The notes under the pieces were generated by a model that made no database searches, was not told the origin of the DNA, and was given only the letters and a program-made list of their open reading frames with translations. Below, piece by piece: positions 4,446 through 64,000 of a stretch of DNA of 64,000 nucleotides. The translations under genes were made by a program, and so were the position numbers. Numbering within the stretch: position 1 is the first letter of the stretch; each line of letters opens with the position of its first letter. Source of the stretch: Macrostomum lignano (Eukaryota). The stretch is from the NCBI GenBank assembly GCA_002269645.1, contig NIVC01002205.1, positions 62,001 to 126,000 on the forward strand. The letters are read 5' to 3'.

Positions 4446-4750
4446 GCAACATCTGCACCTTCCTGTGTCCTTGTTGATTGTTATGGTGGGGCGCGAGGAC
4501 TTGAGCTCCAGAGAGTGTTATCACCTCTCTTTTCATTTATGTTAGGCCTATCACCTTTGAATTGTCTACTTATTATACTTACTTCTTTTATGAAATAATT
4601 CAAATTCAAGAATGGATAATTTTGGTTGATTCTGCATGCACTCTACTTGCAATTAAAAAGCTCTGACTTGCAATCCATATTTGCAGCTTCTCCATCGCAT
4701 CAAGCCCAGGTTAAGCAATGCAGTGCCAGGGTCTGGACGAAAATGCCACC

Positions 4751-21885: not shown

Positions 21886-22161
21886 AGGCTGAGTGATGGA
21901 TAGAGGGCAGGCTGAGTGACGGATAGAGGGCAGGCTGACTGATGGGTAGAGGGCAGGCTGACTGATGGGTAGAGGGCAGGCTGACTGATGGGTAGAGGGC
22001 AGGCTGACTGATGGGTAGAGGGCAGGCTGACTGATGGGTAGAGGGCAGGCTGATTGATGGGTAGAGGGCAGGCTGACTGATGGGTAGAGGGCAGGCTGAC
22101 TGATGGGTAGAGGGCAGGCTGACTGATGGGTAGAGGGCAGGCTGACTGATGGGTAGAGGGC
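21886..22161. repeat. 23-bp G-rich minisatellite (TGACTGATGGGTAGAGGGCAGGC), left block
   Basis: Read directly; lies in intron 2 of the claudin-like gene. Confidence 0.95.
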
Positions 22162-24110: not shown

Positions 24111-24803
24111 AATGATTGACCGAGAGCAGTATGATATTGGCTAGAGGCCTAAATAGTTGGTTACTAGAGAATGAAAATGCATGAGGCACATGTTTTTGCA
24201 GGCTACTAACGAGAAAAGTGAGCAGTGACTAGAACAAATTTTGCAGGTCGGCCTCCAGCAAATTGCTCTCACCTGACAGCAGGCAGCAGATGAAGCACAG
24301 AAGGTGCATGGCCCGGCTCAACTTAAAGGTGTTGGACGCCACCATGAGGATCTCCATGAACAGGCTGAAGCCAAGCATGGCTACCCCAATTATAGCGAAG
24401 GCCTTGATTGTGTTGGCCCATGCTGAAATTGAGCATACACAGGCTATGGAGAATTTGTCTCTCATAACTACGATACGAGTATCACAAACACCTAAGCAAA
24501 CTACTATTTACTATTCGTTTTCAAGACCCTCCTCCATTCTTAAAAACAAGAAATACATGGCATAGTCCTGTCAAATCCAATACTCCTAATGAGTACTCCT
24601 GATGACTCCTAATGACAGTATAGGAGTGACATGTGGCAGTCACTCTGTGCCTAAGATGACAGTGACAGTGGCAGTGCCCTAAGACAGTTTTTTAAACATA
24701 AATTTTCTATTCAATCAGCTGCTAGGCTAGCAAAGGGCCGAGAAACTGTATAAATTGTGTCAGGGCCTCCTAAGAGCCCAAACTCACCCTCATTGGGGGG
24801 GCA

Positions 24804-41300: not shown

Positions 41301-42154
41301 CCACAGGACCCACCTCAGTTGCTGGGTGAACAACAGCAGCAGTACATGTCCCAGGACCTGCTTACCAATTCAGCTGTTCCCAGCACCTCAGCGCATGTCA
41401 ACCACGTCTCCTTGCCGCTGGATTTGCCCATGCAGCAACCGGGGCAGTCGCACCAGCAGCTGCAGCTGCAGCACCAACCCGCTGCTCATCGGCCGCAGAA
41501 AAAGCCAAAGAAGGTTAAGGAATTGAAGTACAGGTGAGGTTATTGATATTGTATTAACACTTGTCGGGGTCTTTGATGACTATGAGTATCTGATCACTTA
41601 CGTAATCGGATCCTAATCATTTTAGTTAAGTTTTAAGCCGGAAATGCAGTCTTTTTTTAGGCCAAGTGGCCCTGTACACCGTACGACGGACTACATAAGT
41701 ATAAACGATACTTTAGTAGTCATGCACCGGACTCTAAATTTGTTTAAAAGCCACTGCTTGAAATGTATTCCTGATATCGCACTCAAACAAAATATTTTTT
41801 CAATCAAAAATACATTATCGCTGCAGATGCTCCCAGTGCTCAAAGATCTACCGCCAGAATATCCACCTGCGAAAACACGTGATGTCGCAACACAGCCTAT
41901 CAAAGCCACACAAGTGCCCCACTTGCGAGTACACTACAGTTGAGAAGAGCCACCTCACCGTGCACATCCGCAAGCACACTGGCGAGCGGCCTTACAAATG
42001 CCGAGATTGCGACTACTCGACCGCGCAGAATTGCACACTCAAGGCGCACTACCTTCGCAAGCACCCAGGCAGCATTGTCCACTGCGCCAGGTGCGGCATG
42101 GACTTCGTCACCGAGCACGAAAAGGACAAGCACGAGAGGGGCTGCGGCGAGTGA
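35312..42154 (+). CDS. BCL11/ZNF296-like zinc-finger transcription factor, about 567 aa, 4 exons
   Basis: Phase-compatible exons 35312-36048, 40628-41039, 41307-41533, 41827-42154 (1704 nt). N-terminal CCHC finger (LSCGACHTEF..MDFHRFLDHKISSC) and C2H2 finger (CSKC...PWSLLQHLQFDH), as in BCL11. C-terminal C2H2 cluster with a TGERPY linker. An upstream exon is not excluded. Confidence 0.8.
36906..37244. mobile_element. Older hAT-type MITE copy (CAGGG...GGCGACGCCCCTG) with internal 21-bp repeats
   Basis: Shares the TCATTTTGGCGCCGCAGGCAC unit (reverse complement) with the 42996-43425 element. The left TIR and TSD are degenerate. Confidence 0.55.
37286..37795. repeat. 14-bp minisatellite CATGAGYGCACTG(A/C) with higher-order structure
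   Basis: Read directly; interrupted three times by AATGATATACATGTAAG. Confidence 0.95.
39720..40400. repeat. AT-rich minisatellite, about 42-bp unit (TTTACACATGTATCCTTACACGTATCTTTACACATAAGTATC) made of 12-16 bp subunits
   Basis: Read directly; lies in intron 1 of the zinc-finger gene. Confidence 0.95.
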
Positions 42155-42995: not shown

Positions 42996-43425
42996 CAGTG
43001 GCGTAGCCGGGGGCGGGGCGGGGGGGGGCCGCGGCCCCAAATCGCCTGGGGGGTGGGGTTGAGCGCGGCGGGTACCAAAAACCATGAAGCAATTTAGTGC
43101 CTGCGGCGCTAAAATAAGTGCCTGCGGCGCCAAAATGAGTGCCTGCGGCGCCAAGATGAGTGCCTGCGGCGCCAAAATGAGTGCCTGCGGCGCTAAAATA
43201 AGTGCCTGCGGCGCCAAAATGAGTGCCTGCGGCCCCAAAATAAGTGCCTGCGGCCCCAAAATAAGTGCCTGCGGCGCCAAGATGAGTGCCTGCGGCGCCA
43301 AAATGAGTGCCTGCGGCGCCAAAATGAGTGCCTGCGGCGCCAAAAGTGGCAATGGCATAAGGCATGCTATTGGCCAGCCAAGCCAACCCGGCCCCCCTCA
43401 ATTGAATTTCCTGGCTACGCCACTG
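42996..43425. mobile_element. hAT-type MITE carrying a 21-bp x about 12 internal array
   Basis: Perfect 13-bp TIRs CAGTGGCGTAGCC / GGCTACGCCACTG, 8-bp TSD ATGTGCAG (42988-42995 and 43426-43433), internal unit GTGCCTGCGGCGCCAAAATGA. Confidence 0.9.
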
Positions 43426-44291
43426 ATGTGCAGTTGCTAGGAAACAGTAGCATACAGTTTTGCACAGTATTGAATTAAAATTCATTTTTTGGGACACCCG
43501 GTATAGTCACTGATGCATAAATAGACACTTGGAAGCATTCAATTCAAATGACAATCTATGTTAACCTGTTGATGCAAGTTAATATATTGGCGCGCAAAAG
43601 TTTATTTTTTTGCTGCAGATTTTTCATATGCGTACAGTAAGTGCTATTCATGTAAATCCTCTCTAGCTAAAGAGTCCAGTATTTATTGATGGGGTGCATG
43701 CGCAATGTAGAACAGGGTCACATGGGAAAGATAGCTAGTAATTTGGCACCCAACTGTGTTCAAGGCTTTTTTGTTCAATCGACGCGTTCATTTTTTTTCT
43801 TCAAATTGTGAAATTCTCATCTTGCACTGCTTAATTTTTGTCTAATGTGGCTAAGTGTTGAGATGCCTTATGACCCCAGTGTTACAATACGATTGAATAC
43901 CATATAGTAGGTTTATTCTGTACGCATACGCTGTTGCTTGCCTAAAGATAAAGATACTACTATAATTGTGCTCCAGAATAGGTATCCACAGTTTTGCTAA
44001 TAAATAAATACTGTATTGGCATGCTACGCAGTACCTGAAAATTTCAAAGGCGTTGCGTTGCTTGCACGCTTAGCGCATGTAAATGTGATTCAAAACCATC
44101 TCGATTGATGACTGTGGTGGTTTGCAGCCTACATGTAAGCTTTGTCCAGTGAGAATTGCATGTACATATTATAATGGGCTGGCTATATAGGAACAAAAAG
44201 TTGGATTTTAAAAGATTCGAGCTATGCATAGATACATCTAGCAACAGAAAATTATCCACACCTGCGCTACAAGCTAACAAAGCAACAAGGT

Positions 44292-44996
44292 CACAAAGCT
44301 AAGAATGAGAGCTTACTCTCGTCGCTGAGCTAGCCACCCTCCAAAGGCCACAAAGCTAAGAGTGAGAGCTTAATCTTGTCGCTGAGCTAGCCACCCACCA
44401 AAGGCCACAAAGCTAAGAATGAGAGCTTACTCTCGTCGCTGAGCTAGCCACCCTCCAAAGGCCACAAAGCTAAGAGTGAGAGCTTAATCTTGTCGCTGAG
44501 CTAGCCACCCACCAAAGGCCACAAAGCTAAGAATGAGAGCTTACTCTCGTCGCTGAGCTAGCCACCCTCCAAAGGCCACAAAGCTAAGAGTGAGAGCTTA
44601 ATCTTGTCGCTGAGCTAGCCACCCACCAAAGGCCACAAAGCTAAGAATGAGAGCTTACTCTCGTCGCTGAGCTAGCCACCCTCCAAAGGCCACAAAGCTA
44701 AGAGTGAGAGCTTAATCTTGTCGCTGAGCTAGCCACCCACCAAAGGCCACAAAGCTAAGAGTGAGAGCTTAATCTTGTCGCTGAGCTAGCCACCCACCAA
44801 AGGCCACAAAGCTACGAGTAAGAGCTTAATCTTGTCGCTGAGCTAGCCACCCACCAAAGGCCACAAAGCTAAGAGTGAGAGCTTAATCTTGTCGCTGAGC
44901 TAGCCACCCACCAAAGGCCACAAAGCTACGAGTAAGAGCTTAATCTTGTCGCTGAGCTAGCCACCCACCAAAGGCCACAAAGCTAAGAGTGAGAGC
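44292..44996. repeat. 57-bp minisatellite, about 12 copies, with alternating A/B variants
   Basis: Variant A has AATGAGAGCTTACTCTC...CCCTCC and variant B has AGTGAGAGCTTAATCTT...CCCACC. They alternate for the first 8 units. Confidence 0.95.
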
Positions 44997-45336
44997 TGTC
45001 TGTTAGTGATATGGATGTTATCGATGATATGGATGAACGTACTCTCAAACGAGAGCCCTGACGAATTGACGGTTCAACGGAGCTCTGGCTAAGTTCTACC
45101 AGCGCTGCCCTTCAGTGAGACACTGAGGCCCTCGGGTCGAGGCCACGTTGTCAAATCCGCCAGTTTCTATCTAAACCGCGCTTGATAACGACGCCCTCAG
45201 ACAAGGTTATCGCGGACGTTACGTCACAAGACTGGTGCGGTTGGGCGAGGGAATAAAACACGGACCGGGGGAGACGATGCAGATCAAGCGCCTCAAAGCG
45301 CGAGTAGAGAGCAAAACGGCCGGGAGATTGGACAAG

Positions 45337-47318: not shown

Positions 47319-47763
47319 CAGCCTGAATCTGTCACTCTCCCAACCCAGCCTGAATCTGTCACTCCCCCAACCCAGCCTGAATCTGTCACTCCCCCAACCC
47401 AGCCTGAATCTGTCACTCCCCCAACCCAGCCTGAATTTGTCACTCCCCTAACCCAGCCTGAATCTGTCACTCCCCTAACACAGCCTGAATCTGTCACTCC
47501 CCTAACACAGCCTCTCCCCTAACACAGCCTAAATATGTCACTCCCCTAACACAGCCTGAATCTGTCACTCCCCTAACACAGCCTGAATCTGTCACTCCCC
47601 TAACACAGCCTGAATCTGTCACTCCCCTAACACAGCCTGAATTTGTCACTCCCCTAACCCAGCCTGAATCTGTCACTCCCCTAACACAGCCTGAATCTGT
47701 CACTCCCCTAACACAGCCTGAATCTGTCACTCCCCTAACACAGCCTGAATCTGTCACACAGCC
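47319..47763. repeat. 27-bp minisatellite (CAGCCTGAATCTGTCACTCCCCTAACA) abutting the stop codon of the 47764-48732 gene
   Basis: Read directly; about 16 units. Confidence 0.95.
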
Positions 47764-48732
47764 TTAATTTGGCGTGGCCGCCTCCTTGCTGTCCATGATG
47801 CGGCTGCAGGAGGTGCTGTCCGGCAGTGGGTCGCGCTTCTGTCTCACAATGGCCAGAACCACCTTCACAATGAGGGCGGCAATCAGAGCAGCCGTCAGCT
47901 CCACCGTCAGATCTGAGGTGACGGAGCCGGCCGCATAGTTGCCGGCAACGGAGGTGGCTAAGGCCCAGATGAGGGTGAGGTAGGGCGCGATGAAGAAGCG
48001 CAGGAAGGGGTCCAGGAAGGAGAAGTCTGCGGTGATGTAGGCGCCAAGGAGGCCGCAGAACTGGCATAGGGCCAGCAGGGAGCTGGTAGCCGCCGTGTAG
48101 CCGGTGATGTTGACGATGGCGATGTCCAGATTGAGGAAGCTGGCGATGCAGGTCCAGCCGACGTAGAAGCCGCAGGAGTTCTGCAGCAGGCCGATGACCA
48201 GCCAGTAGTGCAGCCGTAGGCCCTGCTGCCGCAGCTCAATCTTGTGGACCGACAGCCGGTTGAAGGAGAAGATCAGGCAGGCCCACAGGGAGATGGCTAG
48301 CAGGAAGAGCATGATGGTCTGTGGGATGAGGTTGTACTTGTTGTACTCCACCTTGTCCGTGACAAATATCCAGGCGATGTTGAAGCCGCTGCTGATCATG
48401 TGGCAGATCAGGAAGCCCACAGGCAGGAGGCCGGGCACGCAGCACAGTGGCTCGCCGGCCGCGTTCTTGATGAACAGCAGGCTCCAGCAGTACGCCAGCA
48501 TCACAGCCTGGTACACGTAGATCACCGCCCAGATGGTGAAGGCCCAGCCAGGCGGGGTCAGGTTGCTCTTGGTGAGGTTGGCGCGCTGAGTCCACGGGGT
48601 GGCGCTGTTGATGGAGAACAGGCCCAGCCTGTAGCCAACCTCCGAGGTGCTGAAGTAGTTGAACAGCAGCGTGAGCAGCAGCATGATAGTGGTCAGAGCC
48701 ACCAGAGTGATTTGCACGGCTTGGTGGACCAT
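47764..48732 (-). CDS. TspO-like/DUF1774-type multi-pass membrane protein, paralogue A, 322 aa, intronless
   Basis: LTPPGWAFTIWAVIY and FYVGWTCIASFLN motifs, multiple TM segments, strong GC3 codon bias, TATAAAT about 70 bp upstream. The family name is from recalled motifs. Confidence 0.85.
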   Translation of the reverse strand: MVHQAVQITLVALTTIMLLLTLLFNYFSTSEVGYRLGLFSINSATPWTQRANLTKSNLTPPGWAFTIWAVIYVYQAVMLAYCWSLLFIKNAAGEPLCCVPGLLPVGFLICHMISSGFNIAWIFVTDKVEYNKYNLIPQTIMLFLLAISLWACLIFSFNRLSVHKIELRQQGLRLHYWLVIGLLQNSCGFYVGWTCIASFLNLDIAIVNITGYTAATSSLLALCQFCGLLGAYITADFSFLDPFLRFFIAPYLTLIWALATSVAGNYAAGSVTSDLTVELTAALIAALIVKVVLAIVRQKRDPLPDSTSCSRIMDSKEAATPN

Positions 48733-49344: not shown

Positions 49345-49806
49345 ATCATGACAGGTCATTGATTTCCGCCTGTCATTCACCTGTCATCAATCAGCTTTTT
49401 GTCTCATTTACCTGTCATCAATCAGCTTTCTGTCTCATTTACCTGTCATCAATCAGCTTTCTGTCTCATTTACCTGTCATCAATCAGCTTTCTGTCTCAT
49501 TTACCTGTCATCAATCAGCTTTCTGTCTCATTCACCTGTCATCAACTAGCATTCTGTCTGTCATTCATCTGTCATCAACAAGCTTCTCGTCTTTCATTCA
49601 CCTGTCATCAACTAGCATTCTGCTTGTCATTCACCTGTCATCAACAAGCTTCTCGTCTTTAATTCACCTGTCATCAACTAGCATTCTGTCTGTCATTCAT
49701 CTGTCATCAACAAGCTTCTCGTCTTTCATTCACCTGTCATCAACAAGCTTTCTGTCTGTCATTCATCTGTTATCAACTATAGCTTTCTGTCTGTCATTCA
49801 CCTGTC
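49345..49806. repeat. 31-bp minisatellite (ACCTGTCATCAATCAGCTTTCTGTCTCATTT), diverging distally
   Basis: Read directly; lies between the two paralogues. Confidence 0.9.
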
Positions 49807-50151
49807 TTCAGGAGGAGAGAGGACACAAGAGGATGTGAACAGATGGGAGAGAGTAGGGAGAGATGAGATTTAAAAAAATAAATAACTTAAAAGTAGCACA
49901 GTCTGAAACATTTAATTTTGGACTTGCGTTCATAAATAAACTGTTAAATTATATATATATATATATTTCGCTTTTTAGGACAAAGCGGTGTTTGTAAGAC
50001 AAAGATTGCAATTGCAAGTGCAGTTAATATTAAAGACACGAGCTACACAGTGTGGATAGGTCTGTAGTCCATGGTTAGATAACCAAGAGAAAATTCGTGT
50101 TTATTTCAGTGATTTTTAACAAAGCCAGAGCCGGCTGCACTCGCAGCTGAT

Positions 50152-51117
50152 CTAAGAAGCCTTCTCAAAGCTCCCGTCATACGCGCCGCCGTGGCCACTG
50201 CCGGGCATCGGCAGGGGATTCCTCTTCTGCCTGATGACGGCCAGAACCGACTTGGCGATGATGACCAGCGCCAGGGCGACCGCCAGCTCCAGAGTGACTT
50301 TGGTCACAGCCGAGGCCGGGCTGTAGCTGGCGCCGACGCCTGTGGCCACGGCCCACAGCAGGGTCAGGTAGGGCCCGAAGAAGAAGCGCAGGTGGGGGTC
50401 CAGGATGGACAGGTCGGCGGTGACGTAGGCGGCCAGCAGAGCGAACAGCTGACAGAGGCACAGCAGCGAGCTGCTGGTGACTGGCCAGTCGGCCAGGTTG
50501 ATGATGGCGTTGTCGATGTTGATGAAGAGGGCGATCCACGCCCAGCCGGCGTAGAAGCCGCAGGCGTTCTGCTGCAGGCCGATGACCAGCCAGTAGTGCG
50601 GCAGCAGGCCCTCCTGCTGTAACCGGAGCCTTCCCAGCCACAGCTGGCGGATGGAGACGATCACTCCAACGCTGAGCGACACGGCCAGCGCGAGCATCAC
50701 GAAGATCAGGACGATAAGAAAGTATTTGCGGTCAGTTCTGTCGGCCAGCAGGACAAAGGCGGTGTTGAAGACGCTGCTGAGCAAGTGGCAGACCAGGTAG
50801 CCCACGGGCAGCAGGCCAGGCACGCAGCACAGCGGCTGGCCTCGGCTGGTGCTGCGGAACAGCAGGCTCCAGCAGTAAGCCAGCATGCACACCTGGTACA
50901 GGTAGATGAAGCCCCACACACCGAAGGCGTACTCGGGCGGGTTCAGGCCGCTCTGGGTCAGGTTGTTGCGGTTGTCCCACACGCTGCCGCTAGAGTTGGA
51001 GAAGATGCCCAGACTGCGGCCCAGCGAAGAGAAGCTCAGGAAGTTGAAGGCGAAGGTGACGAGCATGAGGGCTGTGGTCACCGTCATCAGGACGATGCGA
51101 GAGACCCGACTCGACAT
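50152..51117 (-). CDS. TspO-like/DUF1774-type multi-pass membrane protein, paralogue B, 321 aa, intronless
   Basis: Collinear with paralogue A (MLAYCWSLLF, PLCCVPGLLPVG, HYWLVIGL.QN.CGFY.GW, LDP.LRFF..PYLTL, RQKR.PLP). Confidence 0.85.
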   Translation of the reverse strand: MSSRVSRIVLMTVTTALMLVTFAFNFLSFSSLGRSLGIFSNSSGSVWDNRNNLTQSGLNPPEYAFGVWGFIYLYQVCMLAYCWSLLFRSTSRGQPLCCVPGLLPVGYLVCHLLSSVFNTAFVLLADRTDRKYFLIVLIFVMLALAVSLSVGVIVSIRQLWLGRLRLQQEGLLPHYWLVIGLQQNACGFYAGWAWIALFINIDNAIINLADWPVTSSSLLCLCQLFALLAAYVTADLSILDPHLRFFFGPYLTLLWAVATGVGASYSPASAVTKVTLELAVALALVIIAKSVLAVIRQKRNPLPMPGSGHGGAYDGSFEKAS

Positions 51118-51672
51118 GCTCCGGCTGTCCGTTCACAAGGCGAGCTGGAATGAAACCGAGACAAAATCTGAAAGACCGAATCACGTGAGACCAGCTAACA
51201 TATAAAGCCCCAGAAAGCACTGACAACCGAGTGACCTTGAAGAGAAGTTTCGCTCTCCGCAGCGGAGAAGTGTAGAGAAATGTGAGTACAATGGCTGAGC
51301 ACACTCTCTAACGCGCCAAGCAGCCTGCGCGTGGTTTAATTTGAGCAATGACTGCTCAAGAGTACTTCTCAGGCTATCTGAGGCAGCACTAAATAGAGTG
51401 CAGCTACATGTAAATTATACAGCCGACAAACTTCTAAGCGCGTTGTTCACGCTGAACTAAAATGTTCTACCGTATGAGGCGGGATTAACGAACGAACCGA
51501 TTAGCAGGAGTTAACGGTCGGCAGGAGTTCACGACAAACTGATAAGACTCGCTGCGACTAATGCGACCCGCAATCGTCAAGAAATGATATTGGTTAGGAC
51601 AAAACAGCTGACCGGACGAAGATTGCAAGCAATAAATAAGTAAACGAGGAGAAAAACTGTGGATTTAATTTA

Positions 51673-51710
51673 GCTCGAGCGCTTTCGGCGTGTTTGCCTT
51701 CTTCAGGAGC
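51673..51710 (-). ncRNA. Minimal type I hammerhead ribozyme (Penelope pLTR/retrozyme type)
   Basis: Minus strand GCTC-CTGAAGA-A-GGC-AAACAC-GCC-GAAA-GCGC-TC-GAGC: stem I GCUC/GAGC, intact CUGANGA and GAAA core, stem II GGC/GCC, palindromic stem III AGCGCU, UC cleavage site. Confidence 0.8.
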
Positions 51711-51955
51711 AAAATTAGTAAAGAGTCTAGAGTGTGGCGAGTGTATTTGTATATATAATAGTAAAAATACACTATAAACTGTCGTTCACCGGCCTAATTG
51801 TCACTACGTATCGCGCCAAATCTGCTGGGTTTTCAGATGTTTTGACGCAAAAAACGCAAATTATACTACTATCTGAAAATGAAGTAAGTAGTATACAAAA
51901 ACGCTATCCTAAGCGTGATATGGCAATATGTAGTCGTAATAACCATGTGCTCATA

Positions 51956-52112
51956 TTAATTCCATGTACATTAATCCCTATCTATCTCAAATTGTACATT
52001 AATTCCATGTACATTAATCCCTATCTATCTCAAATTGTACATTAATTCCATGTACATTAATCCCTATCTATCTCAAATTGTACATTAATTCCATGTACAT
52101 TAATCCCTATCC
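51956..52112. repeat. 43-bp tandem repeat in the left arm (3 full units + partial; 2 full + partial in the right arm)
   Basis: Unit ATTAATTCCATGTACATTAATCCCTATCTATCTCAAATTGTAC. Confidence 0.9.
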
Positions 52113-53229
52113 CAAATTGTCTATCCCCAATTCTACATGTACACTCACATTAATCTACAGTGTCATCCCCAGCGCGCGCACACCCAAGATTACAACTCGA
52201 AACCCTACTACATGTACAATATCATCCAAATGAGTCAACACCCAAGTTTTAAAAACCACGTTATATACATATTCCTATTTATATGTCAATTATTCAAAAC
52301 CTACATGTAGCTGATTACACTACTACCTTTAGTAGAGTTACAAATCAAGATTCTATTGAAAAAGACTGTATTCATATAGTTTCACATTGGAAAAGCGTAT
52401 ATTTTTTTCATTTCAATAATTGAAAAAGAGAGCAAAAACAGTAAGAGACAACAGCAAGTTGAGACTTAATTATAGCCTGTACTACCAAACCCTCCTGCAC
52501 CGCGAATTGAGTGGGTGTGGGAGGCCTCCTCATCGCCATTCCCTCTAGTATATCCTCACCCCTCGAAGCCCCTATACTGAATGTTGAATCACCCTTTAAC
52601 TCGGACCATAGTCAAATTCAACCCTGTTCGAAAACAGCCACCCCTCCGATGTTTACCAGACACAGCGCAGACCCCATAACAAATCGAGCTAAATTTTAAC
52701 ACTCGCCCCTGTTTTCTCTGTCCCCCCCTTCTAAATGCCAAGGAATTTCGACCCTCTCTCCATTTTCAGTGTACAGACAGACCTTTCCACAGCACAGACC
52801 CTATATTAAACTTCAAAACCCCTCTCTTCTCCGATTACGTCATCCATGCCGCCCCAGTTAGCAAGAAACCAACTTTTAATGCACACATCAACCCCGCGAG
52901 CAAATCCGAGTCCGCCAACCTCTACCTGCATTGACAAACCCCAGCTGCATTTGTAAATGTACACAGCCTATGTATGAATCAGTGTCTCCACCGCATGCAA
53001 TTCTGATTTACTTGATTCTAAACTTTGTAAATAGTATAAGTCACCCTTGCGTTTACTAGAAGTAGTGAAGTCCACATATTTAAATACGTGAGGCTATTCA
53101 ATTCTGCCTCTCCGCCTCCCCTACCTTCTCACTTCAAGCTTTCAGACTTGGTCTTTGAGACGGTCGGTTTAATCTGTTAGAAGCAGGAATTAATCATGCA
53201 CTGACCTCTCCATACAAAGTAAAGTTGGA

Positions 53230-54400
53230 ATTTCAGACAAGAAATTTGGTTATTTTGAAAGCTAAATGACTAGAAATGCACATTTTTTTCATTAAAATGC
53301 AGCTTTTCACAGTTTTTTTTACGATTTTAACCTTAAAATGCAGACTTTGTTGATCAAAATCAGTAGTTTCATCACTAGAAACCATACTTTCAACAGCTAA
53401 TTTGTCCAAATGTCGCTTTCAACTTGACCTTAGACTGCTTTTAAGCAGGAATGAACCCCACACAAACATCCACAAGCCAGCCCAAAATCATCCAAAGACA
53501 TGGCTATTGAAGCCTAAATTGCTAGAAATGCGCATTTTTTTCATAAGAAAATACAAATTTTCACAGTTTTTATGCATTTTTACGTTAAAATGCAGACTTT
53601 ATTGATCAAAATCAGTAGTTTCATCACTAGAAACCATACTTTCAGCAACTAATTTGTCCAAATATCGCTTTCAACTTGACCTTAGACAGCTTTTAAGCAG
53701 GAATAACCCCCACGAACATACACAAGCTAGCCCAAAATCATCCAAAGACGGCTGTTGAAGACTAAATTGCTAGAAATGAGCATTTTTTCATAAGAAAACA
53801 CAAATTTTCACAGTTTTTACGCATTTTTTACGTTAAAATGCAGACTTTATTGATCAAAATCAGTAATTCATCACTAAAAACCACAATTTTAACACAAAAT
53901 TATCACAAATGCTACTTCTGGAACTCTGAGACAGCTTTGAGCAGGAATTATAATCGCACACGGATTACCCGAGCCAGTCCAATATTCCACTGAAGCCAGG
54001 GTTTTTTAAAGCTGAATTGTTAGAATTGCTCATTCTTTCGTTTAATAAATGACAATTTTCACAGTTTTATTATTTTCTAACGTTAAAATGCGAAATGTAT
54101 TGGTCAAACTTAGTAGTTTCATCCCAAAAAGCCATAATTTCAACCGCTAATTTGTCCAAATGCTGATTTCAAAGTTGGCAAGAGACAGCTTTCGAGCAGG
54201 AATGAGTCACACACTGATCTCCATATGCACACCCCGGCCCAAGTTGGAATTCCACCCAAGACATTTTCATTGAAAGCTAAATTACTAGAAATTGCACATT
54301 TTCGTTTTAAAAAGGTCAATTTTCACAGTTTTTACTCTTTTTAACGTTAAAATGCTGACTTTATTGAACAAAATTAATCACTTCATCAGCAGAAACCATA
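53230..54400. repeat. Five diverged about 250-bp tandem modules inside the palindrome arm (mirrored at about 58725-59895)
   Basis: Anchor TTTTCACAGTTTT with its C at 53308, 53562, 53809, 54060 and 54324. Confidence 0.85.
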
Positions 54401-57400
54401 ATTTTTACAACTTAATGCTGTTTCATCATTCAAATGTATGTATTTGGTACGTGTAATACCCCTCAAGAAGTCAGGGAAGGGATTATTCTTGAATATAGGG
54501 TTAAAACGTAAAGTTTGCTATAAACCTAGCTATAATAATTTTAACATATACAGTCTGCGAAGCGGTCCGTTGATTTCGATTGACATTTAAACTGTCCCTC
54601 CCAGACCTCTCTCTCTCCTTCTGCACCCACCGAGAAAAGTGACTCATGCGGCAATCAGCTGGACAGGTTTTATTACTGAATTGGCAAAACAGCCAACACC
54701 CAATGGTCATATTAGACTCGTCTTCACAGCACAGACCCATGTAGAACAGAACCACTCGTCCCTGTCTCTCTGACCTTACCATTTCTAACTGTCAAGGAAT
54801 TCCGACCCTCCCTCTCCAATTTCAGTGTACAAACAGATATTTTCACAGCACAGACTCATATATTGAGCCTCCTCCAACCAAAACCCTATCTTGATTACGT
54901 CATCCACCTCCCCATAGGAGCAGTTAGCAAGAAACAAAATTTTTCGATGCACATATGAACACTGTGAACCATGCAAAATCGCACATCTACGGGTCGATTT
55001 TGATTGACAATTTAATACCTTTTGTTGATGCTGCTGTGTACAGTAGTCTTATTTCCGAAGCTCCTAGCAGTCATCTTTTAGATGTGGTGAATCAGTGTTG
55101 TTTTTGCCAACTTTACATCTTGATTCATCCTCCAAATTCTTCAACTCTGACCATATTCAATAATTTAACCCATGCAAGTAGATTTGCCAATTCGCCAAAT
55201 TAGCCAATACGAATGGGGCCAGAGGACCCACCCAAATCGAGCCCTTGTCTCTCTCAGGCCTCTCTCTCCTACACATACCCCAGAAAAGTGACTCATGAGG
55301 CAATCAGTTTAACAGGTTCAGTATACTGAATTGGCAAAACAGCAAACACCCAATGGTCAATGGACTCGTCTTCGCAGCACAGACCATTTTGAATAAAGCC
55401 AAAACACACATACACCCCTATTCTCTGACCAAACCTTTCCATTTCTAGTTGTCAACGAAATTCGACCGGCCTCTCTCTCAATCCCAATGTACATTTTGAC
55501 GAAGCAAGCAGATCTTTTCACAGCACGGACCCAGCCTCCCCCAACCAAAGCCCTATCTCTGATTACGTCATCTATACATCCCCATAGAAGCAGTTAGCAA
55601 GAAAAAAATTCGATGCGCATATATGAACAATGCGAACCAAGCAAATCCGCGCGTCTACCAAAGCCAACCCTACCCTGCGTGCTGTAATTGCATTTGTCAA
55701 TGTACACACCCTATGAATCAGTGTCTCCTTCTTTGGAACACACGAAGGCATTAGTCAGAAAGTTTGGATGCAATTAAAAACTCTCTCGATGCTTTGCGTA
55801 TAAACGAGTAATCGATTGAATCAATTGTACACTTGACACATTTAATTACGTGCTGCCATGCAACGGAAAGACAGGATAATGGGGTGGGTGGTCACGCAGC
55901 CTCATTCTCTCTTTCCTACTGATTTTTCATTATCTATCAATCTCAGCTCTTTCCGGGGCAACTCGCGCATTTGTGCATAGTTCCTCATCAGATTTACCAC
56001 ATGTTCATTTACATGTGATGTACATATGCAAGCGGCAGCCGATTTAAACCTGAGAAATGGTTGAAGCACTCCCCGACTATGACTAAATGCACGTACGTTC
56101 AGTCAAATACAGGAAAATTTGACACCCGTAGTATGAAGATGAAATCTTCACGAAAGCTTCACATGTTTATCTTTCTCTGTGGAAATGACGATAGTTTCTC
56201 AATAAAAATCTGTCATAGGCCCAATATAGCAGTTTAAATATTTTCACGAAAATGTCGCATTATTCAAAGAACTGATTTTTGCAAACTCTACTGTCAGTAG
56301 GAAGATGAGTTTTCATAGAGACATTTTGTAAAACATAGACTAAACTTTCAAATCATTCGTTTACACGACCAACTGTCTATATTAATGGTGGGGTTATTAT
56401 TACTTTACAGAAAAACGCATGTCCTGTGTTACGACACTGCCTAGCAACCGTATAATTTTTGCAGGTCAAGGAGCATTAATACATGAACTAACACTCCTAT
56501 TTTACATTCATTGAGAGGCGGCGGCAGCGGGCGGAGGCGGCAGTAGAGACAGGGACTGTGCTGCGCACAGTCACGGTCCGGCCACCCTCCGCCCGCTGCC
56601 GCCGCCTCTCAATGAATGTAAAATAGGAGTGTTAGTTCATGTATTAATGCTCCTTGACCTGCAAAAATTATACGGTTGCTAGGCAGTGTCGTAACACAGG
56701 ACATGCGTTTTTCTGTAAAGTAATAATAACCCCACCATTAATATAGACAGTTGGTCGTGTAAACGAATGATTTGAAAGTTTAGTCTATGTTTTACAAAAT
56801 GTCTCTATGAAAACTCATCTTCCTACTGACAGTAGAGTTTGCAAAAATCAGTTCTTTGAATAATGCGACATTTTCGTGAAAATATTTAAACTGCTATATT
56901 GGGCCTATGACAGATTTTTATTGAGAAACTATCGTCATTTCCACAGAGAAAGATAAACATGTGAAGCTTTCGTGAAGATTTCATCTTCATACTACGGGTG
57001 TCAAATTTTCCTGTATTTGACTGAACGTACGTGCATTTAGTCATAGTCGGGGGAGTGCTTCAACCATTTCTCAGGTTTAAATCGGCTGCCGCTTGCATAT
57101 GTACATCACATGTAAATGAACATGTGGTAAATCTGATGAGGAACTATGCACAAATGCGCGAGTTGCCCCGGAAAGAGCTGAGATTGATAGATAATGAAAA
57201 ATCAGTAGGAAAGAGAGAATGAGGCTGCGTGACCACCCACCCCATTATCCTGTCTTTCCGTTGCATGGCAGCACGTAATTAAATGTGTCAAGTGTACAAT
57301 TGATTCAATCGATTACTCGTTTATACGCAAAGCATCGAGAGAGTTTTTAATTGCATCCAAACTTTCTGACTAATGCCTTCGTGTGTTCCAAAGAAGGAGA

Positions 57401-60400
57401 CACTGATTCATAGGGTGTGTACATTGACAAATGCAATTACAGCACGCAGGGTAGGGTTGGCTTTGGTAGACGCGCGGATTTGCTTGGTTCGCATTGTTCA
57501 TATATGCGCATCGAATTTTTTTCTTGCTAACTGCTTCTATGGGGATGTATAGATGACGTAATCAGAGATAGGGCTTTGGTTGGGGGAGGCTGGGTCCGTG
57601 CTGTGAAAAGATCTGCTTGCTTCGTCAAAATGTACATTGGGATTGAGAGAGAGGCCGGTCGAATTTCGTTGACAACTAGAAATGGAAAGGTTTGGTCAGA
57701 GAATAGGGGTGTATGTGTGTTTTGGCTTTATTCAAAATGGTCTGTGCTGCGAAGACGAGTCCATTGACCATTGGGTGTTTGCTGTTTTGCCAATTCAGTA
57801 TACTGAACCTGTTAAACTGATTGCCTCATGAGTCACTTTTCTGGGGTATGTGTAGGAGAGAGAGGCCTGAGAGAGACAAGGGCTCGATTTGGGTGGGTCC
57901 TCTGGCCCCATTCGTATTGGCTAATTTGGCGAATTGGCAAATCTACTTGCATGGGTTAAATTATTGAATATGGTCAGAGTTGAAGAATTTGGAGGATGAA
58001 TCAAGATGTAAAGTTGGCAAAAACAACACTGATTCACCACATCTAAAAGATGACTGCTAGGAGCTTCGGAAATAAGACTACTGTACACAGCAGCATCAAC
58101 AAAAGGTATTAAATTGTCAATCAAAATCGACCCGTAGATGTGCGATTTTGCATGGTTCACAGTGTTCATATGTGCATCGAAAAATTTTGTTTCTTGCTAA
58201 CTGCTCCTATGGGGGAGGTGGATGACGTAATCAAGATAGGGTTTTGGTTGGAGGAGGCTCAATATATGAGTCTGTGCTGTGAAAATATCTGTTTGTACAC
58301 TGAAATTGGAGAGGGAGGGTCGGAATTCCTTGACAGTTAGAAATGGTAAGGTCAGAGAGACAGGGACGAGTGGTTCTGTTCTACATGGGTCTGTGCTGTG
58401 AAGACGAGTCTAATATGACCATTGGGTGTTGGCTGTTTTGCCAATTCAGTAATAAAACCTGTCCAGCTGATTGCCGCATGAGTCACTTTTCTCGGTGGGT
58501 GCAGAAGGAGAGAGAGAGGTCTGGGAGGGACAGTTTAAATGTCAATCGAAATCAACGGACCGCTTCGCAGACTGTATATGTTAAAATTATTATAGCTAGG
58601 TTTATAGCAAACTTTACGTTTTAACCCTATATTCAAGAATAATCCCTTCCCTGACTTCTTGAGGGGTATTACACGTACCAAATACATACATTTGAATGAT
58701 GAAACAGCATTAAGTTGTAAAAATTATGGTTTCTGCTGATGAAGTGATTAATTTTGTTCAATAAAGTCAGCATTTTAACGTTAAAAAGAGTAAAAACTGT
58801 GAAAATTGACCTTTTTAAAACGAAAATGTGCAATTTCTAGTAATTTAGCTTTCAATGAAAATGTCTTGGGTGGAATTCCAACTTGGGCCGGGGTGTGCAT
58901 ATGGAGATCAGTGTGTGACTCATTCCTGCTCGAAAGCTGTCTCTTGCCAACTTTGAAATCAGCATTTGGACAAATTAGCGGTTGAAATTATGGCTTTTTG
59001 GGATGAAACTACTAAGTTTGACCAATACATTTCGCATTTTAACGTTAGAAAATAATAAAACTGTGAAAATTGTCATTTATTAAACGAAAGAATGAGCAAT
59101 TCTAACAATTCAGCTTTAAAAAACCCTGGCTTCAGTGGAATATTGGACTGGCTCGGGTAATCCGTGTGCGATTATAATTCCTGCTCAAAGCTGTCTCAGA
59201 GTTCCAGAAGTAGCATTTGTGATAATTTTGTGTTAAAATTGTGGTTTTTAGTGATGAATTACTGATTTTGATCAATAAAGTCTGCATTTTAACGTAAAAA
59301 ATGCGTAAAAACTGTGAAAATTTGTGTTTTCTTATGAAAAAATGCTCATTTCTAGCAATTTAGTCTTCAACAGCCGTCTTTGGATGATTTTGGGCTAGCT
59401 TGTGTATGTTCGTGGGGGTTTATTCCTGCTTAAAAGCTGTCTAAGGTCAAGTTGAAAGCGATATTTGGACAAATTAGTTGCTGAAAGTATGGTTTCTAGT
59501 GATGAAACTACTGATTTTGATCAATAAAGTCTGCATTTTAACGTAAAAATGCATAAAAACTGTGAAAATTTGTATTTTCTTATGAAAAAAATGCGCATTT
59601 CTAGCAATTTAGGCTTCAATAGCCATGTCTTTGGATGATTTTGGGCTGGCTTGTGGATGTTTGTGTGGGGTTCATTCCTGCTTAAAAGCAGTCTAAGGTC
59701 AAGTTGAAAGCGACATTTGGACAAATTAGCTGTTGAAAGTATGGTTTCTAGTGATGAAACTACTGATTTTGATCAACAAAGTCTGCATTTTAAGGTTAAA
59801 ATCGTAAAAAAAAACTGTGAAAAGCTGCATTTTAATGAAAAAAATGTGCATTTCTAGTCATTTAGCTTTCAAAATAACCAAATTTCTTGTCTGAAATTCC
59901 AACTTTACTTTGTATGGAGAGGTCAGTGCATGATTAATTCCTGCTTCTAACAGATTAAACCGACCGTCTCAAAGACCAAGTCTGAAAGCTTGAAGTGAGA
60001 AGGTAGGGGAGGCGGAGAGGCAGAATTGAATAGCCTCACGTATTTAAATATGTGGACTTCACTACTTCTAGTAAACGCAAGGGTGACTTATACTATTTAC
60101 AAAGTTTAGAATCAAGTAAATCAGAATTGCATGCGGTGGAGACACTGATTCATACATAGGCTGTGTACATTTACAAATGCAGCTGGGGTTTGTCAATGCA
60201 GGTAGAGGTTGGCGGACTCGGATTTGCTCGCGGGGGTTGATGTGTGCATTAAAAGTTGGTTTCTTGCTAACTGGGGCGGCATGGATGACGTAATCGGAGA
60301 AGAGAGGGGTTTTGAAGTTTAATATAGGGTCTGTGCTGTGGAAAGGTCTGTCTGTACACTGAAAATGGAGAGAGGGTCGAAATTCCTTGGCATTTAGAAG

Positions 60401-63400
60401 GGGGGACAGAGAAAACAGGGGCGAGTGTTAAAATTTAGCTCGATTTGTTATGGGGTCTGCGCTGTGTCTGGTAAACATCGGAGGGGTGGCTGTTTTCGAA
60501 CAGGGTTGAATTTGACTATGGTCCGAGTTAAAGGGTGATTCAACATTCAGTATAGGGGCTTCGAGGGGTGAGGATATACTAGAGGGAATGGCGATGAGGA
60601 GGCCTCCCACACCCACTCAATTCGCGGTGCAGGAGGGTTTGGTAGTACAGGCTATAATTAAGTCTCAACTTGCTGTTGTCTCTTACTGTTTTTGCTCTCT
60701 TTTTCAATTATTGAAATGAAAAAAATATACGCTTTTCCAATGTGAAACTATATGAATACAGTCTTTTTCAATAGAATCTTGATTTGTAACTCTACTAAAG
60801 GTAGTAGTGTAATCAGCTACATGTAGGTTTTGAATAATTGACATATAAATAGGAATATGTATATAACGTGGTTTTTAAAACTTGGGTGTTGACTCATTTG
60901 GATGATATTGTACATGTAGTAGGGTTTCGAGTTGTAATCTTGGGGTGTGCGCGCGCTGGGGATGACACTGTAGATTAATGTGAGTGTACATGTAGAATTG
61001 GGGATAGACAATTTGGGATAGGGATTAATGTACATGGAATTAATGTACAATTTGAGATAGATAGGGATTAATGTACATGGAATTAATGTACAATTTGAGA
61101 TAGATAGGGATTAATGTACATGGAATTAATATGAGCACATGGTTATTACGACTACATATTGCCATATCACGCTTAGGATAGCGTTTTTGTATACTACTTA
61201 CTTCATTTTCAGATAGTAGTATAATTTGCGTTTTTTGCGTCAAAACATCTGAAAACCCAGCAGATTTGGCGCGATACGTAGTATTGTCTGCAACAACCAT
61301 CATTGTACAGTATGTGACTACAAATGCATAGCTAAAATTATTGGATAAATATGCCAATGCTAAGGCTAAGCCAATATATATATATAGTTCATATAATTTC
61401 CAAAAATAGTAATAAAAATTTCTAGGTATTGCTTTTAGAAAATGTTTCATTTTTACAATAACTGTATGATATTTTAACATTTGCAAGATCGATCCAGACT
61501 ATTTCGCTTCTTTGTATTTTTTTAGATAACTTTATATTAGCATCGATTTTGTTGTATTGTTTAAAAAAATATTATTTAACGTTAGTGCTGTTTGAGTCTC
61601 CCTAAACGCCCGCACCGCCCTGCAGCGTACACATTAAAACAAATTGGACTATAACTGAAGACATTTCAAAATACGTTTTCTGTTAAGATTCAAAAATTTT
61701 TATTAAATTTAGTTTTTTTACTTTGAAATATAAAATTCAGTGAATAATAAGTGATTTTAATAGTAATATTATTTAAAATAATATTAGGCAGTTTTTTGCA
61801 CCGTAACCGTGTGAATATTGCCGGTGTTATTTACTACACGGTAACTGAAAAAATACCTTCTAAATAGTTATCCTATCAGGGACTACTCAATATTTGTCCC
61901 TGTATCTTGTATTTTCATAATGAGTTTTAACTAACTAAAGTCGGTAGATGGAGTTTAGGCTTGATTTATATGTGTTTATAGCTTAGCGTTTTTTTATTAG
62001 CTCGTACTCGTATACTATTATTAATGCAAAGTACGAAGGGTGTTTCAAAAGAAACGAACGACAACGTTTATTTAAAGTAAACTAAAGTTATTTTTTTAAT
62101 TACTCTTACAACAAATAGTTTTCTCTGCAATCAAATACTGCATTAATAAAAAATGTTATAATGTGTAGCGGTTCGGGACACCGGTGTGCGAGGTGCGAGT
62201 GCGTGTTTTATGGAGATCCGTGCTGTTTTTTCTAAGAAGGTAAAAGTAAAAAGTGTATAAAAAGCATATCTAGGTCATTTCGATCAGAAGGAGGATTGGA
62301 AGTGCAACGTGCAACGGTTCGTGTCCGAAACAGTTTAGGGCGAAACGACCGTTTACCGATGATGTGATGGCAAACTCTGCATTTGTATCGTTTCAGTTTG
62401 CCTGCCTGTAATTTTACATATACTGATTTTGATATAGAAGAATTCACTGTCTATACTTTATAGGTATAGGCCCATGCCCTATGAAGGTTATGAAATTATC
62501 AACTTTCCCTTAGGCGGCCTACGCCTGGGTTTATGATTTTATGAAGAGGATACCAGATTACCAGTGCATGTTGCATCTATGTTTTAGGCTTAATAATATT
62601 ATTAATAATGCTTACCTGAGTCTAATTCCAGATAAAAAGAAGTTAGTTTTATTTGTTTTTATACATTTTAGAACTAGAAGTACAACTAGGCCAACATAGA
62701 ATCTTTTTTTCTAGAGTTAAAGATAAACAATTGTAACTATTTGTATACATTTTTGTCTGAATTAGAATAATTTCAACAAGCCTAAACTGCTAAACAAAAT
62801 GAATGATATTTTTTTATCTTTGGTTGAACAATCAATAGTCTTATGATTTCTCAAGATTTTCAAGACCTAAACTCTATACCTAAATGTAAACTTCTGAACT
62901 TGTGAAGATTCAAGAATATTGCCATGTTGACTAAGATGGAATTCTTGTACAAAAGTTGTTATGCGTTTGTGTGTGCTTGTCAAATTCATATGCACTTGCG
63001 CACTGAAAAAGAGCCTACTTGCGCGCTCTTAAAGGTGTGTGCGCTCCATCGTATGCACTTGCACAAGAAGCTGTTTGCCACAAAATCACAAATAGGATTT
63101 GACTTTTACATGCATTCAACATGGTTATATGCCATGTGGTATATGCACGGTTCCGGCCGAAGTTGTCATATTCGAGATCGTCATCTGCAGCTTACAAGAA
63201 AAACAACTAAATTATCTAAATCGTCATCATCTCAGTATTGGACAATGCTGCATTAACAAAATCGTCATATTGTGTTGCATTGGCTGCGCAAGGATCTTAG
63301 CTCATGGCGGCAGCGTGTTCTTGTTTGCCAACAAATTAAAAGATTTACATTTTATAACTTAAGGCTTATTCAAACTACCATTAAATGAGCCATCAAAATC

Positions 63401-63708
63401 AGTCAAATACAAAGGAATCAAACTAAACGAGCCTTTATAGGCCAGGGAAATAATCTCGATTATGCATGTACATTATGTACCCTGTACAATGTAACAGTGT
63501 ACATTTAGTTTTTTGGTCTCATGTACATGATGTATATGTATATATATATTGCATGAATAAGAGCAGAGATATATGTACATGCATGTGCTTACACTGAATA
63601 TTGAGCACTCCTGCAATGCTTTTACTGCAGCTTAACTTATAAACAGGGGCAATCTCTACTAGTGAGTTGATAAATCGTGAACTGATAAATAAACAATTAC
63701 TGAAGGCT

Positions 63709-63876
63709 ATGTATCCATGCATAGTTTGTCGCAAAGAAGTTCAACCGAAGCAACATGGCTTTCAGTGTGATGGTTGTCAATGCTGGCAACACAGAGTAGG
63801 GTGTTCGTCAGTCAGCCTAAATGAGTACCGCAGACTCTAGGGTACTGTCTTTCATTGGTCTTGCAGTCAGTGTGAG
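63709..63876 (+). pseudogene. PHD-finger relic with an in-frame stop, probably transposon-derived
   Basis: MYPCIVCRKEVQPKQHGFQCDGCQCWQHRVGCSSVSLNEYRRL*GTVFHWSCSQC gives a C4HC3 pattern, with TAG at 63838-63840. Confidence 0.65.
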
Positions 63877-64000
63877 TGCATGGAAGTTACAAAGTACATG
63901 TAACTGTGTGTGTTAAAAACTAGCATTGCTTGATTGCTTTTTTACTATGTATATGTATTTTTTGGACAGGCTCTATTGAACAGCCTGCTGCTCAACTTAA

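What the first reader, a model, noticed from the sequence alone, without database searches (positions are those of the whole stretch)
51803..61282. 9.5-kb non-coding, near-perfect palindrome inserted as a unit with a 6-bp target duplication
Seen: two about 4.7-kb arms. The offset between them is fully accounted for by five 1-nt homopolymer indels and one 43-bp repeat unit, and mirrored ORFs translate identically (I did not check every base). ATTGTC directly flanks both ends. The termini are ACTAC...GTAGT and no transposase, integrase or polymerase is visible. Established: 6-bp TSDs with long TIRs are typical of Polintons/Mavericks, but those normally end AG...CT. An alternative reading is CACTAC with a 5-bp ATTGT TSD and a missing terminal G (Transib-like). 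Inference: an unclassified giant foldback element, very young or homogenised by conversion, able to form a cruciform or a 4.7-kb dsRNA (ADAR or siRNA substrate).
Basis: partly seen in the sequence, partly recalled or inferred. Interest (0 to 1): 0.85.

Follow-up and report, generated by a model that had tools for sequence, protein, structure and literature searches.

The report
Giant foldback-type insertion in a flatworm
A 9.5-kb non-coding, almost perfect DNA palindrome sits as one inserted block with a 6-bp target duplication upstream of a gene in the flatworm Macrostomum lignano; it looks like a young foldback-type transposon of undetermined superfamily, which is a curiosity, not a new kind of element.

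Summary
The arms are 51803-56537 and 56586-61282. ATTGTC flanks both ends.

The window is Macrostomum lignano assembly Mlig_3_7, contig NIVC01002205.1. Two duplicated copies of the locus on other contigs (L002, L003) join the left and right flanks directly and carry a single TTTGTC. So the block is a unit insertion with a real 5-6 bp target duplication. Those flanks differ from the window by 3.6% substitutions, so the palindrome is much younger than the duplication, or its arms are kept identical.

The block is non-coding. Its anatomy is that of foldback transposons: a 152-bp terminal domain with a repeated terminal motif, subterminal 43-bp repeats, a long internally repetitive inner domain, and a tiny middle (a 48-nt imperfect hairpin).

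The 6-bp duplication fits neither the Mutator-type (8-10 bp) nor the P/Galileo-type (7 bp) foldbacks. The termini and the absence of genes do not fit Polintons.

I could not search the host genome for other copies or inspect raw reads, so family status and the assembly remain unproven. The cruciform, dsRNA and ADAR ideas are inference only.

The parts
51791..51796 (.). Six bases (GGCCTA) present at the left junction but absent from both empty homeologous sites. Either an older indel between homeologues or junctional filler.
51797..51802 (.). Left copy of the target-site duplication, ATTGTC
   Evidence: The empty sites carry one copy, TTTGTC.
51803..56537 (+). Left arm, 4,735 nt. C-rich on this strand (C 1130, G 715). 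Non-coding.
51803..51954 (+). Outer terminal domain, 152 nt. It starts with ACTAC, and that pentamer recurs three more times in both orientations.
   Evidence: 21 of 5000 shuffles reach this count
51955..52111 (+). Subterminal 43-bp tandem array, 3.7 copies, 100% matches
52700..52989 (+). First copy of a dispersed direct subrepeat of about 300-450 bp. The other copies lie at 54593-54990 and 55246-55728, and pairs are 74-86% alike.
53182..54412 (+). Old tandem array of units of about 250 bp, about 4.9 copies, 72-77% alike. The mirror array at 59242-59872 was called by Tandem Repeats Finder with period 252.
56538..56585 (.). Centre: a 48-nt imperfect hairpin. The apex stem is 56554-56561 / 56565-56572 and the loop is TGC (56562-56564). 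All mismatches of the whole palindrome are concentrated here.
56586..61282 (-). Right arm, the mirror image of the left arm. It lacks one 43-bp unit and has seven run-length differences.
61017..61130 (-). Subterminal 43-bp tandem array of the right arm, 2.7 copies
61283..61288 (.). Right copy of the target-site duplication, ATTGTC
50152..51117 (-). Neighbouring host gene, 321 aa, a predicted membrane protein with no Pfam family. Its start codon lies 685 bp from the insertion, so the block sits in its upstream region. Its paralogues were used to fetch the empty sites.

Best explanation
The block is a real, single insertion of a non-autonomous, foldback-type class II (terminal-inverted-repeat) element into the upstream region of a host gene in Macrostomum lignano.

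Shown:
- The whole 9,480-bp block is absent from two duplicated copies of the locus.
- The target hexamer is present once in those copies and twice here.
- The block is non-coding.
- Its ends have the layered layout of foldback transposons: an outer domain with a repeated terminal motif, then subterminal tandem repeats, then a long internally repetitive inner domain, then a minute middle.

Inferred:
- The block was integrated by a transposase or integrase supplied in trans that makes 6-bp staggered cuts.
- The perfect symmetry arose when one half of a longer progenitor was copied onto itself. A broken or nascent 3' end would fold back at the short imperfect inverted repeat that now forms the centre, and synthesis would then proceed back along the same arm. 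This would explain why every mismatch of the palindrome lies in the central 48 nt while the 4.7-kb arms are identical.
- It inserted, or was last homogenised, long after the genome duplication that produced the homeologous loci.
- If transcribed it would give a long hairpin RNA. Nothing here shows that it is transcribed.
For: Palindrome and its differences.

Empty sites on contigs NIVC01000822.1 (L002) and NIVC01001250.1 (L003), with the flanks joined through a single TTTGTC.

The flanks differ from L003 by 87 substitutions in 2,400 aligned nt plus 33 gaps. The arms differ by 0 in 4,735 nt.

The two arms differ by a whole 43-bp unit, so they are two distinct stretches of DNA, not the two strands of one sequenced molecule.

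Non-coding.

Foldback-like domain layout. It matches the published description of foldback elements: long TIRs with tandem repeats, a small non-coding middle, and mostly non-autonomous copies (PMC4079207; PMC3169594).

Central imperfect hairpin.

The same window holds other TIR elements whose inverted repeats are built from tandem subrepeats, including an apparently intact MULE. So this genome carries class II elements of that style.
Against: Only one copy was seen. None is in the rest of the window, L003, or the metagenome, viral, plasmid and phage collections. The host genome itself could not be searched, so repetition at other sites, the hallmark of a transposon, is untested.

Six extra bases (GGCCTA) and an A/T difference lie exactly at the left junction relative to the empty sites. 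A clean transposase-made junction does not predict this.

The 6-bp duplication matches no described foldback lineage. Tetris has 8-10 bp and Tm1 has 9 bp; Galileo has 7 bp (my own knowledge).

No partner element with these ends was found. The MULE in the window has different ends and a candidate 11-bp duplication.

The structure rests on one PacBio CLR/Canu assembly, and no reads were inspected.
Confidence: 0.6

Rival explanations
1. One-off capture of a fold-back (hairpin-capped or snap-back) DNA fragment at a chromosome break by end joining, with no transposase involved. The 6-bp repeat would come from fill-in of a staggered break or from microhomology, and GGCCTA would be junctional filler.
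For: Extra GGCCTA and the A/T difference at the left junction only. Only one copy was seen. The centre looks like the turn-around point of a fold-back synthesis event.
Against: The outer ends are exactly symmetric to the last base and are flanked by an exact 6-bp direct repeat of the target. Randomly broken fragments would not be expected to end symmetrically. The ends also carry a transposon-like layout, with the terminal pentamer repeated 4 times in 152 bp followed by subterminal 43-bp repeats. GGCCTA can equally be one of the many small indels that separate the homeologues: 33 gaps in 2.4 kb.
Confidence: 0.14
2. Assembly artefact. The true locus holds an element with long inverted repeats, but its interior was skipped or mirrored by a chimeric (missed-adapter or fold-back) long read, so the near spacer-less palindrome does not exist as such.
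For: There is a single assembly from PacBio CLR reads with Canu 1.4, polished only with Pilon, in a genome the authors call hard to assemble and highly redundant. Perfect arm identity and run-length-only differences are what consensus-calling of multi-mapping repeats would also give. I did not compare the 48-nt centre with the SMRTbell adapter, because no tool held that sequence.
Against: A simple palindromic chimera would put the same flank, inverted, on both sides. Here the two flanks differ and are collinear with two empty homeologous sites. The arms differ by a whole 43-bp unit, which two strands of one molecule cannot. The centre is an imperfect continuation of the palindrome itself with a 3-nt loop. 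Even under this rival, the locus must carry an insertion whose two ends are inverted copies over kilobases.
Confidence: 0.12
3. A host hairpin-RNA (endo-siRNA) locus that arose by inverted duplication and is kept symmetric by arm-to-arm gene conversion. On this view it is not a mobile element.
For: Perfect arms beside a diverged centre are also what long-term arm-to-arm conversion produces. The arms contain tandem subrepeats.
Against: The block is absent as a unit from the homeologous loci, and its boundaries carry a target duplication. No part of the arms resembles nearby sequence, so it did not arise by local duplication. There is no evidence of transcription, and no gene is called inside it in the deposited annotation.
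Confidence: 0.04
4. Integrated replicative form of a hairpin-ended linear episome or virus-like DNA. The centre would be a replicated hairpin telomere and the arms the two strands of a 4.7-kb genome.
For: The arm length of 4.7 kb and the imperfectly paired central hairpin recall turn-around replicative intermediates. This resemblance comes from my own knowledge and was not tested.
Against: There is no coding capacity at all: the longest stop-free stretch is 96 codons, below the shuffle mean, and there are no Pfam hits. There is no match in the viral contig or phage collections. The arms are made of old, diverged host-like subrepeats.
Confidence: 0.02

Closest known systems
Foldback (FB)-type transposons of the Mutator superfamily: Drosophila FB, Tetris (D. 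virilis), Tm1 (Meloidogyne)
   Same: Long inverted repeats make up nearly the whole element. The inverted repeats are layered, with an outer domain, tandem subrepeats and an inner domain. The middle domain is small and non-coding, copies are mostly non-autonomous, and there is a flanking target duplication (PMC4079207; PMC3169594; window).
   Different: The target duplication is 6 bp, not 8-10 bp. The arms are 4.7 kb and identical, whereas Tm1 inverted repeats average 93% identity. The middle is only 48 nt. No transposase-bearing relative is known, and the FB-style MULE in this same window has unrelated ends.
Galileo (P superfamily, Drosophila), a foldback-like element
   Same: [quoted passage not shown]
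   Different: Galileo makes 7-bp duplications, and its inverted repeats reach about 1.2 kb (both figures from my own knowledge, not tested here). No THAP/P-type transposase is linked to this element.
Polinton/Maverick elements
   Same: 6-bp target duplication and terminal inverted repeats.
   Different: Termini are AC...GT instead of AG...CT. No polymerase, integrase or capsid genes are present: the block is non-coding. The inverted repeats are many times longer and make up the whole element.
De novo large palindromes formed at short inverted repeats (fold-back inversions in gene amplification; the Tetrahymena rDNA palindrome)
   Same: Giant perfect arms surround a short, imperfectly symmetric centre that contains a small inverted repeat. 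This is my proposed origin of the symmetry. The comparison rests on established knowledge, not on a test here.
   Different: Those palindromes form in place at chromosome breaks. This one sits as an insertion with a target duplication between flanks that are contiguous in the homeologues.

Membership tests
Foldback-type TIR elements (structural class) | Inverted repeats that make up most of the element, with a small or absent middle domain | tested here: met
   Arms of 4,735 and 4,697 nt around a 48-nt centre
Foldback-type TIR elements (structural class) | Inverted repeats internally repetitive (tandem subrepeats) | tested here: met
   43-bp array at 51955-52111, array of about 250-bp units at 53182-54412, and dispersed subrepeats
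Foldback-type TIR elements (structural class) | Flanking target-site duplication, verified against an empty site | tested here: met
   ATTGTC on both sides. Two empty homeologous sites carry a single TTTGTC. Six extra nt at the left junction are unexplained.
Foldback-type TIR elements (structural class) | Several copies at unrelated sites, each with its own duplication (a repeat family) | not testable with these tools
   No tool holds the M. lignano genome for DNA search. There are no copies in the window, L003, or the metagenome, viral, plasmid and phage collections.
Mutator/MULE superfamily (most foldback elements) | Target duplication of 8-11 bp | tested here: not met
   The duplication is exactly 6 bp and cannot be extended in either direction. 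Tetris has 8-10 bp and Tm1 has 9 bp.
Mutator/MULE superfamily (most foldback elements) | Ends shared with a MULE-transposase-bearing element | tested here: not met
   The only MULE available (window, about 9722-13512) has unrelated ends. The rest of the genome was not searched.
Polinton/Maverick | 6-bp target duplication | tested here: met
Polinton/Maverick | 5'-AG...CT-3' termini | tested here: not met
   Termini are ACTAC...GTAGT. The family feature is taken from established knowledge.
Polinton/Maverick | Protein-primed polymerase, retroviral-like integrase and capsid genes | tested here: not met
   Longest stop-free stretch is 96 codons, and the ten longest give no Pfam hits
Transib | 5-bp duplication with CAC... 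termini at both ends | tested here: not met
   Reading ATTGT as the duplication gives CACTAC at the left but ...GTAGT without the final G at the right. That is an asymmetry in an element with no other arm mismatch.
CACTA/EnSpm | CACTA termini with a 2-4 bp duplication | tested here: not met
   Same end asymmetry as for Transib, and the flanking direct repeat is 5-6 bp
Palindromic long-read chimera (assembly artefact) | The same flank, inverted, on both sides of the palindrome, or a palindrome at a contig end | tested here: not met
   The flanks differ and are collinear with two empty sites. The block is internal to a 193-kb contig.
Palindromic long-read chimera (assembly artefact) | Library adapter sequence at the centre | not tested
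   No tool-held copy of the SMRTbell adapter was found. The centre is a GC-rich imperfect extension of the palindrome.
Palindromic long-read chimera (assembly artefact) | No single read spans flank-arm-centre-arm-flank | not testable with these tools
   Raw reads (SRX1063031, named) are not available here

The most novel reading that the evidence does not exclude
The block is the first seen member of a recently active foldback family in a flatworm. It would be moved by an enzyme that makes 6-bp staggered cuts, either integrase-like as in Polintons or a still unnamed transposase. Its perfect 4.7-kb hairpin shape would have been created in a single fold-back copying event. That would add a new lineage to the independent origins of foldback architecture.
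Probability: 0.25. Interest if true: 0.5.

Novelty: new member of a known kind. Interest (0 to 1): 0.35.

Why it matters
If it is real and part of a family, three things follow.
- It would be a very young class II insertion in M. lignano, a regeneration and transgenesis model whose genome is hard to assemble because of repeats.
- It would show that foldback architecture also arises on a 6-bp-duplication lineage.
- A nearly spacer-less 9.5-kb palindrome is expected to be unstable, so it would be a natural marker for presence/absence and stability across lines and homeologues.

It lies 685 bp upstream of one copy of a triplicated host gene, so it could also be used to ask descriptively whether such an insertion changes that copy's expression. 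None of this opens a long-standing question.

Tried and rejected
- **Exact look-ups of ORFs inside the palindrome and across the right junction** in the public assembly index found nothing. No genes are called inside it.
- **Scans of the JGI metagenome and IMG/VR collections** with the terminal 23-mer found nothing. This was expected, because neither holds flatworm genomes.
- **Megablast of an arm against plasmids and phages** gave no match, so vector or contaminant is rejected.
The ten longest stop-free segments gave nothing.
- **Mitochondrial-insert idea.** Flatworm mitochondrial codes lengthen the stop-free stretches only as expected from having fewer stop codons. By eye, the translations do not look like membrane proteins. 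I rejected the idea informally.
- **Source of the extra GGCCTA.** There is no informative template in the window.
- **Literature.** I found no description of foldback or palindromic elements in Macrostomum.
- **L002 was never copied to the script folder**, so quantitative flank divergence uses L003 only.
- **Protein-database search with arm ORFs: deliberately not run.** The host's own proteins appear there only from the NCBI annotation, and that annotation calls nothing inside the block. The chance of a hit did not justify the cost.
- **SMRTbell adapter.** I could not obtain its letters from the paper library, so I did not compare it.


Full report
**1. What is there**

An inverted-repeat search of 50000-64000 tiles the region with 100% complementary segments from 51803 to 61282. 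A global alignment of the left half with the reverse complement of the right half shows no substitution in the arms (51803-56537 against 56586-61282). The only differences are one extra 43-bp unit on the left and seven single-base differences.

All seven are length differences of mononucleotide runs of 2-9 nt. In six of them the right arm is the longer.

The 43-bp unit belongs to a perfect subterminal array. It has 3.7 copies at 51955-52111 and 2.7 copies at 61017-61130.

ATTGTC lies directly outside both ends, and the ends read ACTAC...GTAGT.

**2. Where the window comes from**

An exact look-up of the neighbouring 321-aa protein (50152-51117, minus strand) places the window on contig NIVC01002205.1 of GCA_002269645.1. 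Its closest relatives are named Macrostomum lignano proteins, and the accession prefix is that of assembly Mlig_3_7.

That assembly was made with Canu 1.4 from PacBio CLR reads of the inbred line DV1 and polished only with Pilon. Its authors report 180 Mb of duplicated blocks at least 95% identical, a consequence of the extra large chromosomes of that line.

Run-length errors in a repeat onto which short reads multi-map are therefore expected. I read the seven 1-nt differences as consensus errors, and the arms as identical apart from the 43-bp unit.

**3. The insertion test**

The protein has a 98% identical paralogue, P0001, on NIVC01000822.1, and a partial one, P0004, on NIVC01001250.1. I fetched both loci (L002, L003).

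| Locus | Sequence at the site |
|---|---|
| L002 and L003 (empty) | ...CTGTCGTTCACC-TTTGTC-TGCAACAACCATCATTGTAC... |
| Window (filled) | ...CTGTCGTTCACC-GGCCTA-ATTGTC-[9,480 bp]-ATTGTC-TGCAACAACCATCATTGTAC... |

In both other loci the window's left and right flanks are directly joined.

BLAST of the window against L003 aligns 50084-51790 to L003 10803-9097, and 61284-62030 to L003 9095-8355. The two blocks abut in L003, and no arm sequence occurs anywhere in its 20.5 kb.

So the block is absent as a unit from two copies of the locus, and the target hexamer is single there and double here. That is the classical proof of a target-site duplication. By chance a 6-bp flank match has probability 4^-6.

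The duplication cannot be lengthened by shifting the boundaries.

Two details do not follow from a clean integration. Six extra bases (GGCCTA, 51791-51796) lie outside the left duplicate, and the first base of the hexamer is A here but T in the empty sites. L002 and L003 share their indels relative to the window, so they count as one lineage. Whether GGCCTA pre-dated the insertion cannot be decided.

**4. Age**

The flanks differ from L003 by 87 substitutions in 2,400 aligned nt (3.6%) and by 33 gaps. The arms differ by 0 in 4,735 nt.

Inside one arm, the tandem units of about 250 bp (53182-54412) are only 72-77% alike, and the three copies of a 300-450-bp subrepeat are 74-86% alike.

The arm sequence is therefore old. 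The mirror duplication is very recent relative to the homeologue split, or is kept identical by conversion.

**5. Content**

- The longest stop-free stretch in six frames of an arm is 96 codons. Shuffles of the same composition give 108 +/- 22.
- The ten longest segments have no Pfam match.
- There is no tRNA.
- Rfam gives only sub-threshold miRNA-precursor hits on the central hairpin, as any hairpin would.
- There is no match in the plasmid or phage collections.
- The deposited annotation calls no gene inside the block.

The block is non-coding.

**6. Anatomy**

From the outside in, each arm has:

1. A 152-nt unique domain in which the terminal pentamer ACTAC occurs four times in both orientations. 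Only 21 of 5000 shuffles reach three further copies. The motif was chosen after seeing the data, so this is weak support.
2. The 43-bp array.
3. About 4.4 kb of inner domain with the old subrepeats.

The left arm's top strand is C-rich (1130 C against 715 G).

The 48-nt centre folds as an imperfect continuation of the palindrome. It has an 8-bp perfect stem at the apex and a TGC loop. All five irregularities of the whole structure lie in these 48 nt.

This layout is the published layout of foldback transposons: a flanking domain, tandem repeats, an inner domain, and a small non-coding middle (PMC4079207; PMC3169594).

**7. How it most likely works**

*Shown:* unit insertion, target duplication, no coding capacity, foldback layout.

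*Inferred:*
- It is a non-autonomous element integrated by an enzyme supplied in trans that cuts the target with a 6-bp stagger.
- Its symmetry came from one fold-back copying event. A 3' end would pair at the short imperfect inverted repeat now at the centre and be extended back along the same arm. This would leave a perfect palindrome around an imperfect core.
- The concentration of all mismatches in the core is what this predicts. Long-term arm-to-arm conversion would predict it too.
- Cruciform formation, hairpin RNA and editing are possible consequences, but none is evidenced.

An ADAR-like gene lies in the same window. I treat that as coincidence.

**8. Comparison with known families**

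- **As a structural class it is a foldback element.**
- **As a superfamily member it fails every test I could make.** Mutator-type foldbacks make 8-10 bp duplications, and Galileo makes 7 bp (my own knowledge). Polintons share the 6 bp, but they end AG...CT and carry genes. The Transib and CACTA readings need a left end, CACTAC, whose partner lacks its last base, in an element with no other arm mismatch.
- **The window's own MULE is not a partner.** It is a 477-aa ORF with FLYWCH and MULE domains, and its inverted repeats are built from 15-16-bp tandem units. Its ends are unrelated and it has a candidate 11-bp duplication.

**9. Artefact question**

A missed-adapter or fold-back chimeric read would place the same flank, inverted, on both sides. 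Here the flanks differ and are collinear with two empty sites. The arms differ by a whole 43-bp unit, so they are two stretches of DNA and not two strands of one molecule.

The one artefact not excluded is that a chimeric read made the assembler skip a real interior between two very long inverted repeats. That would still leave a giant-TIR insertion. I could not inspect reads, and I could not obtain the adapter sequence from the tools.

**10. What could not be done**

No tool here can search the M. lignano genome by DNA. The central question, whether the same ends occur elsewhere with their own 6-bp duplications, remains open. Scans of the metagenome and viral collections were negative, as expected.

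**11. Verdict**

The interpretation as a young foldback-type insertion is the best reading (about 0.6). Rivals are a one-off captured fold-back fragment (0.14) and an assembly problem in the interior (0.12).

This is a new member of a known structural kind. Its duplication length is unusual and its arms are exceptionally long and perfect. Interest is moderate to low (0.35).

Noticed in passing
window 9711-13523: An apparently intact Mutator-like element. It has a 477-aa ORF (10823-12256, minus strand) with FLYWCH and MULE transposase domains. Its inverted repeats are built from 15-16-bp tandem units, about 4 copies on the left and about 19 on the right. An 11-bp direct repeat, CCCGTACGTGT, at 9711-9721 and 13513-13523 is a candidate target duplication. 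This is the Tm1/FB style of element.
   Followed up: partly
window 4718-9325 (+): Exons of an ADAR-like gene, with double-stranded-RNA-binding and adenosine-deaminase (editase) domains. It also contains a 36-bp coding minisatellite at 5005-5294.
   Followed up: partly
window 2062-2151: Interstitial array of 15 GGTTAG units, a telomere-type repeat, inside the contig.
   Followed up: no
window 24801-27780: A 3-kb unit bounded by 130-nt inverted repeats (94% complementary). It encloses a 393-aa ORF (25312-26493) with no Pfam match, and may be another class II element.
   Followed up: partly
window 36995-37104 and 43091-43345: Arrays of a 21-bp unit in inverted orientation, 6 kb apart. They lie around exons of a BCL11A-like zinc-finger gene (35312-36052 and about 40152-42154). 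It is unclear whether they bound an element.
   Followed up: no
window 21886-24110: A G-rich 23-bp minisatellite of about 60 units in two blocks. It gives the window's GC and GC-skew peak. The window holds many other minisatellites, for example 39723-40402, 44287-44997, 47319-47757 and 49373-49810.
   Followed up: no
window 47764-48732 and 50152-51117 (-); L002, L003: A tandem pair of membrane-protein genes, 322 and 321 aa, about 51% identical, with no Pfam family. Relatives were found only in M. lignano. The locus is present in at least three copies in the assembly. In L003 the gene next to the insertion site is annotated as only 173 aa.
   Followed up: partly
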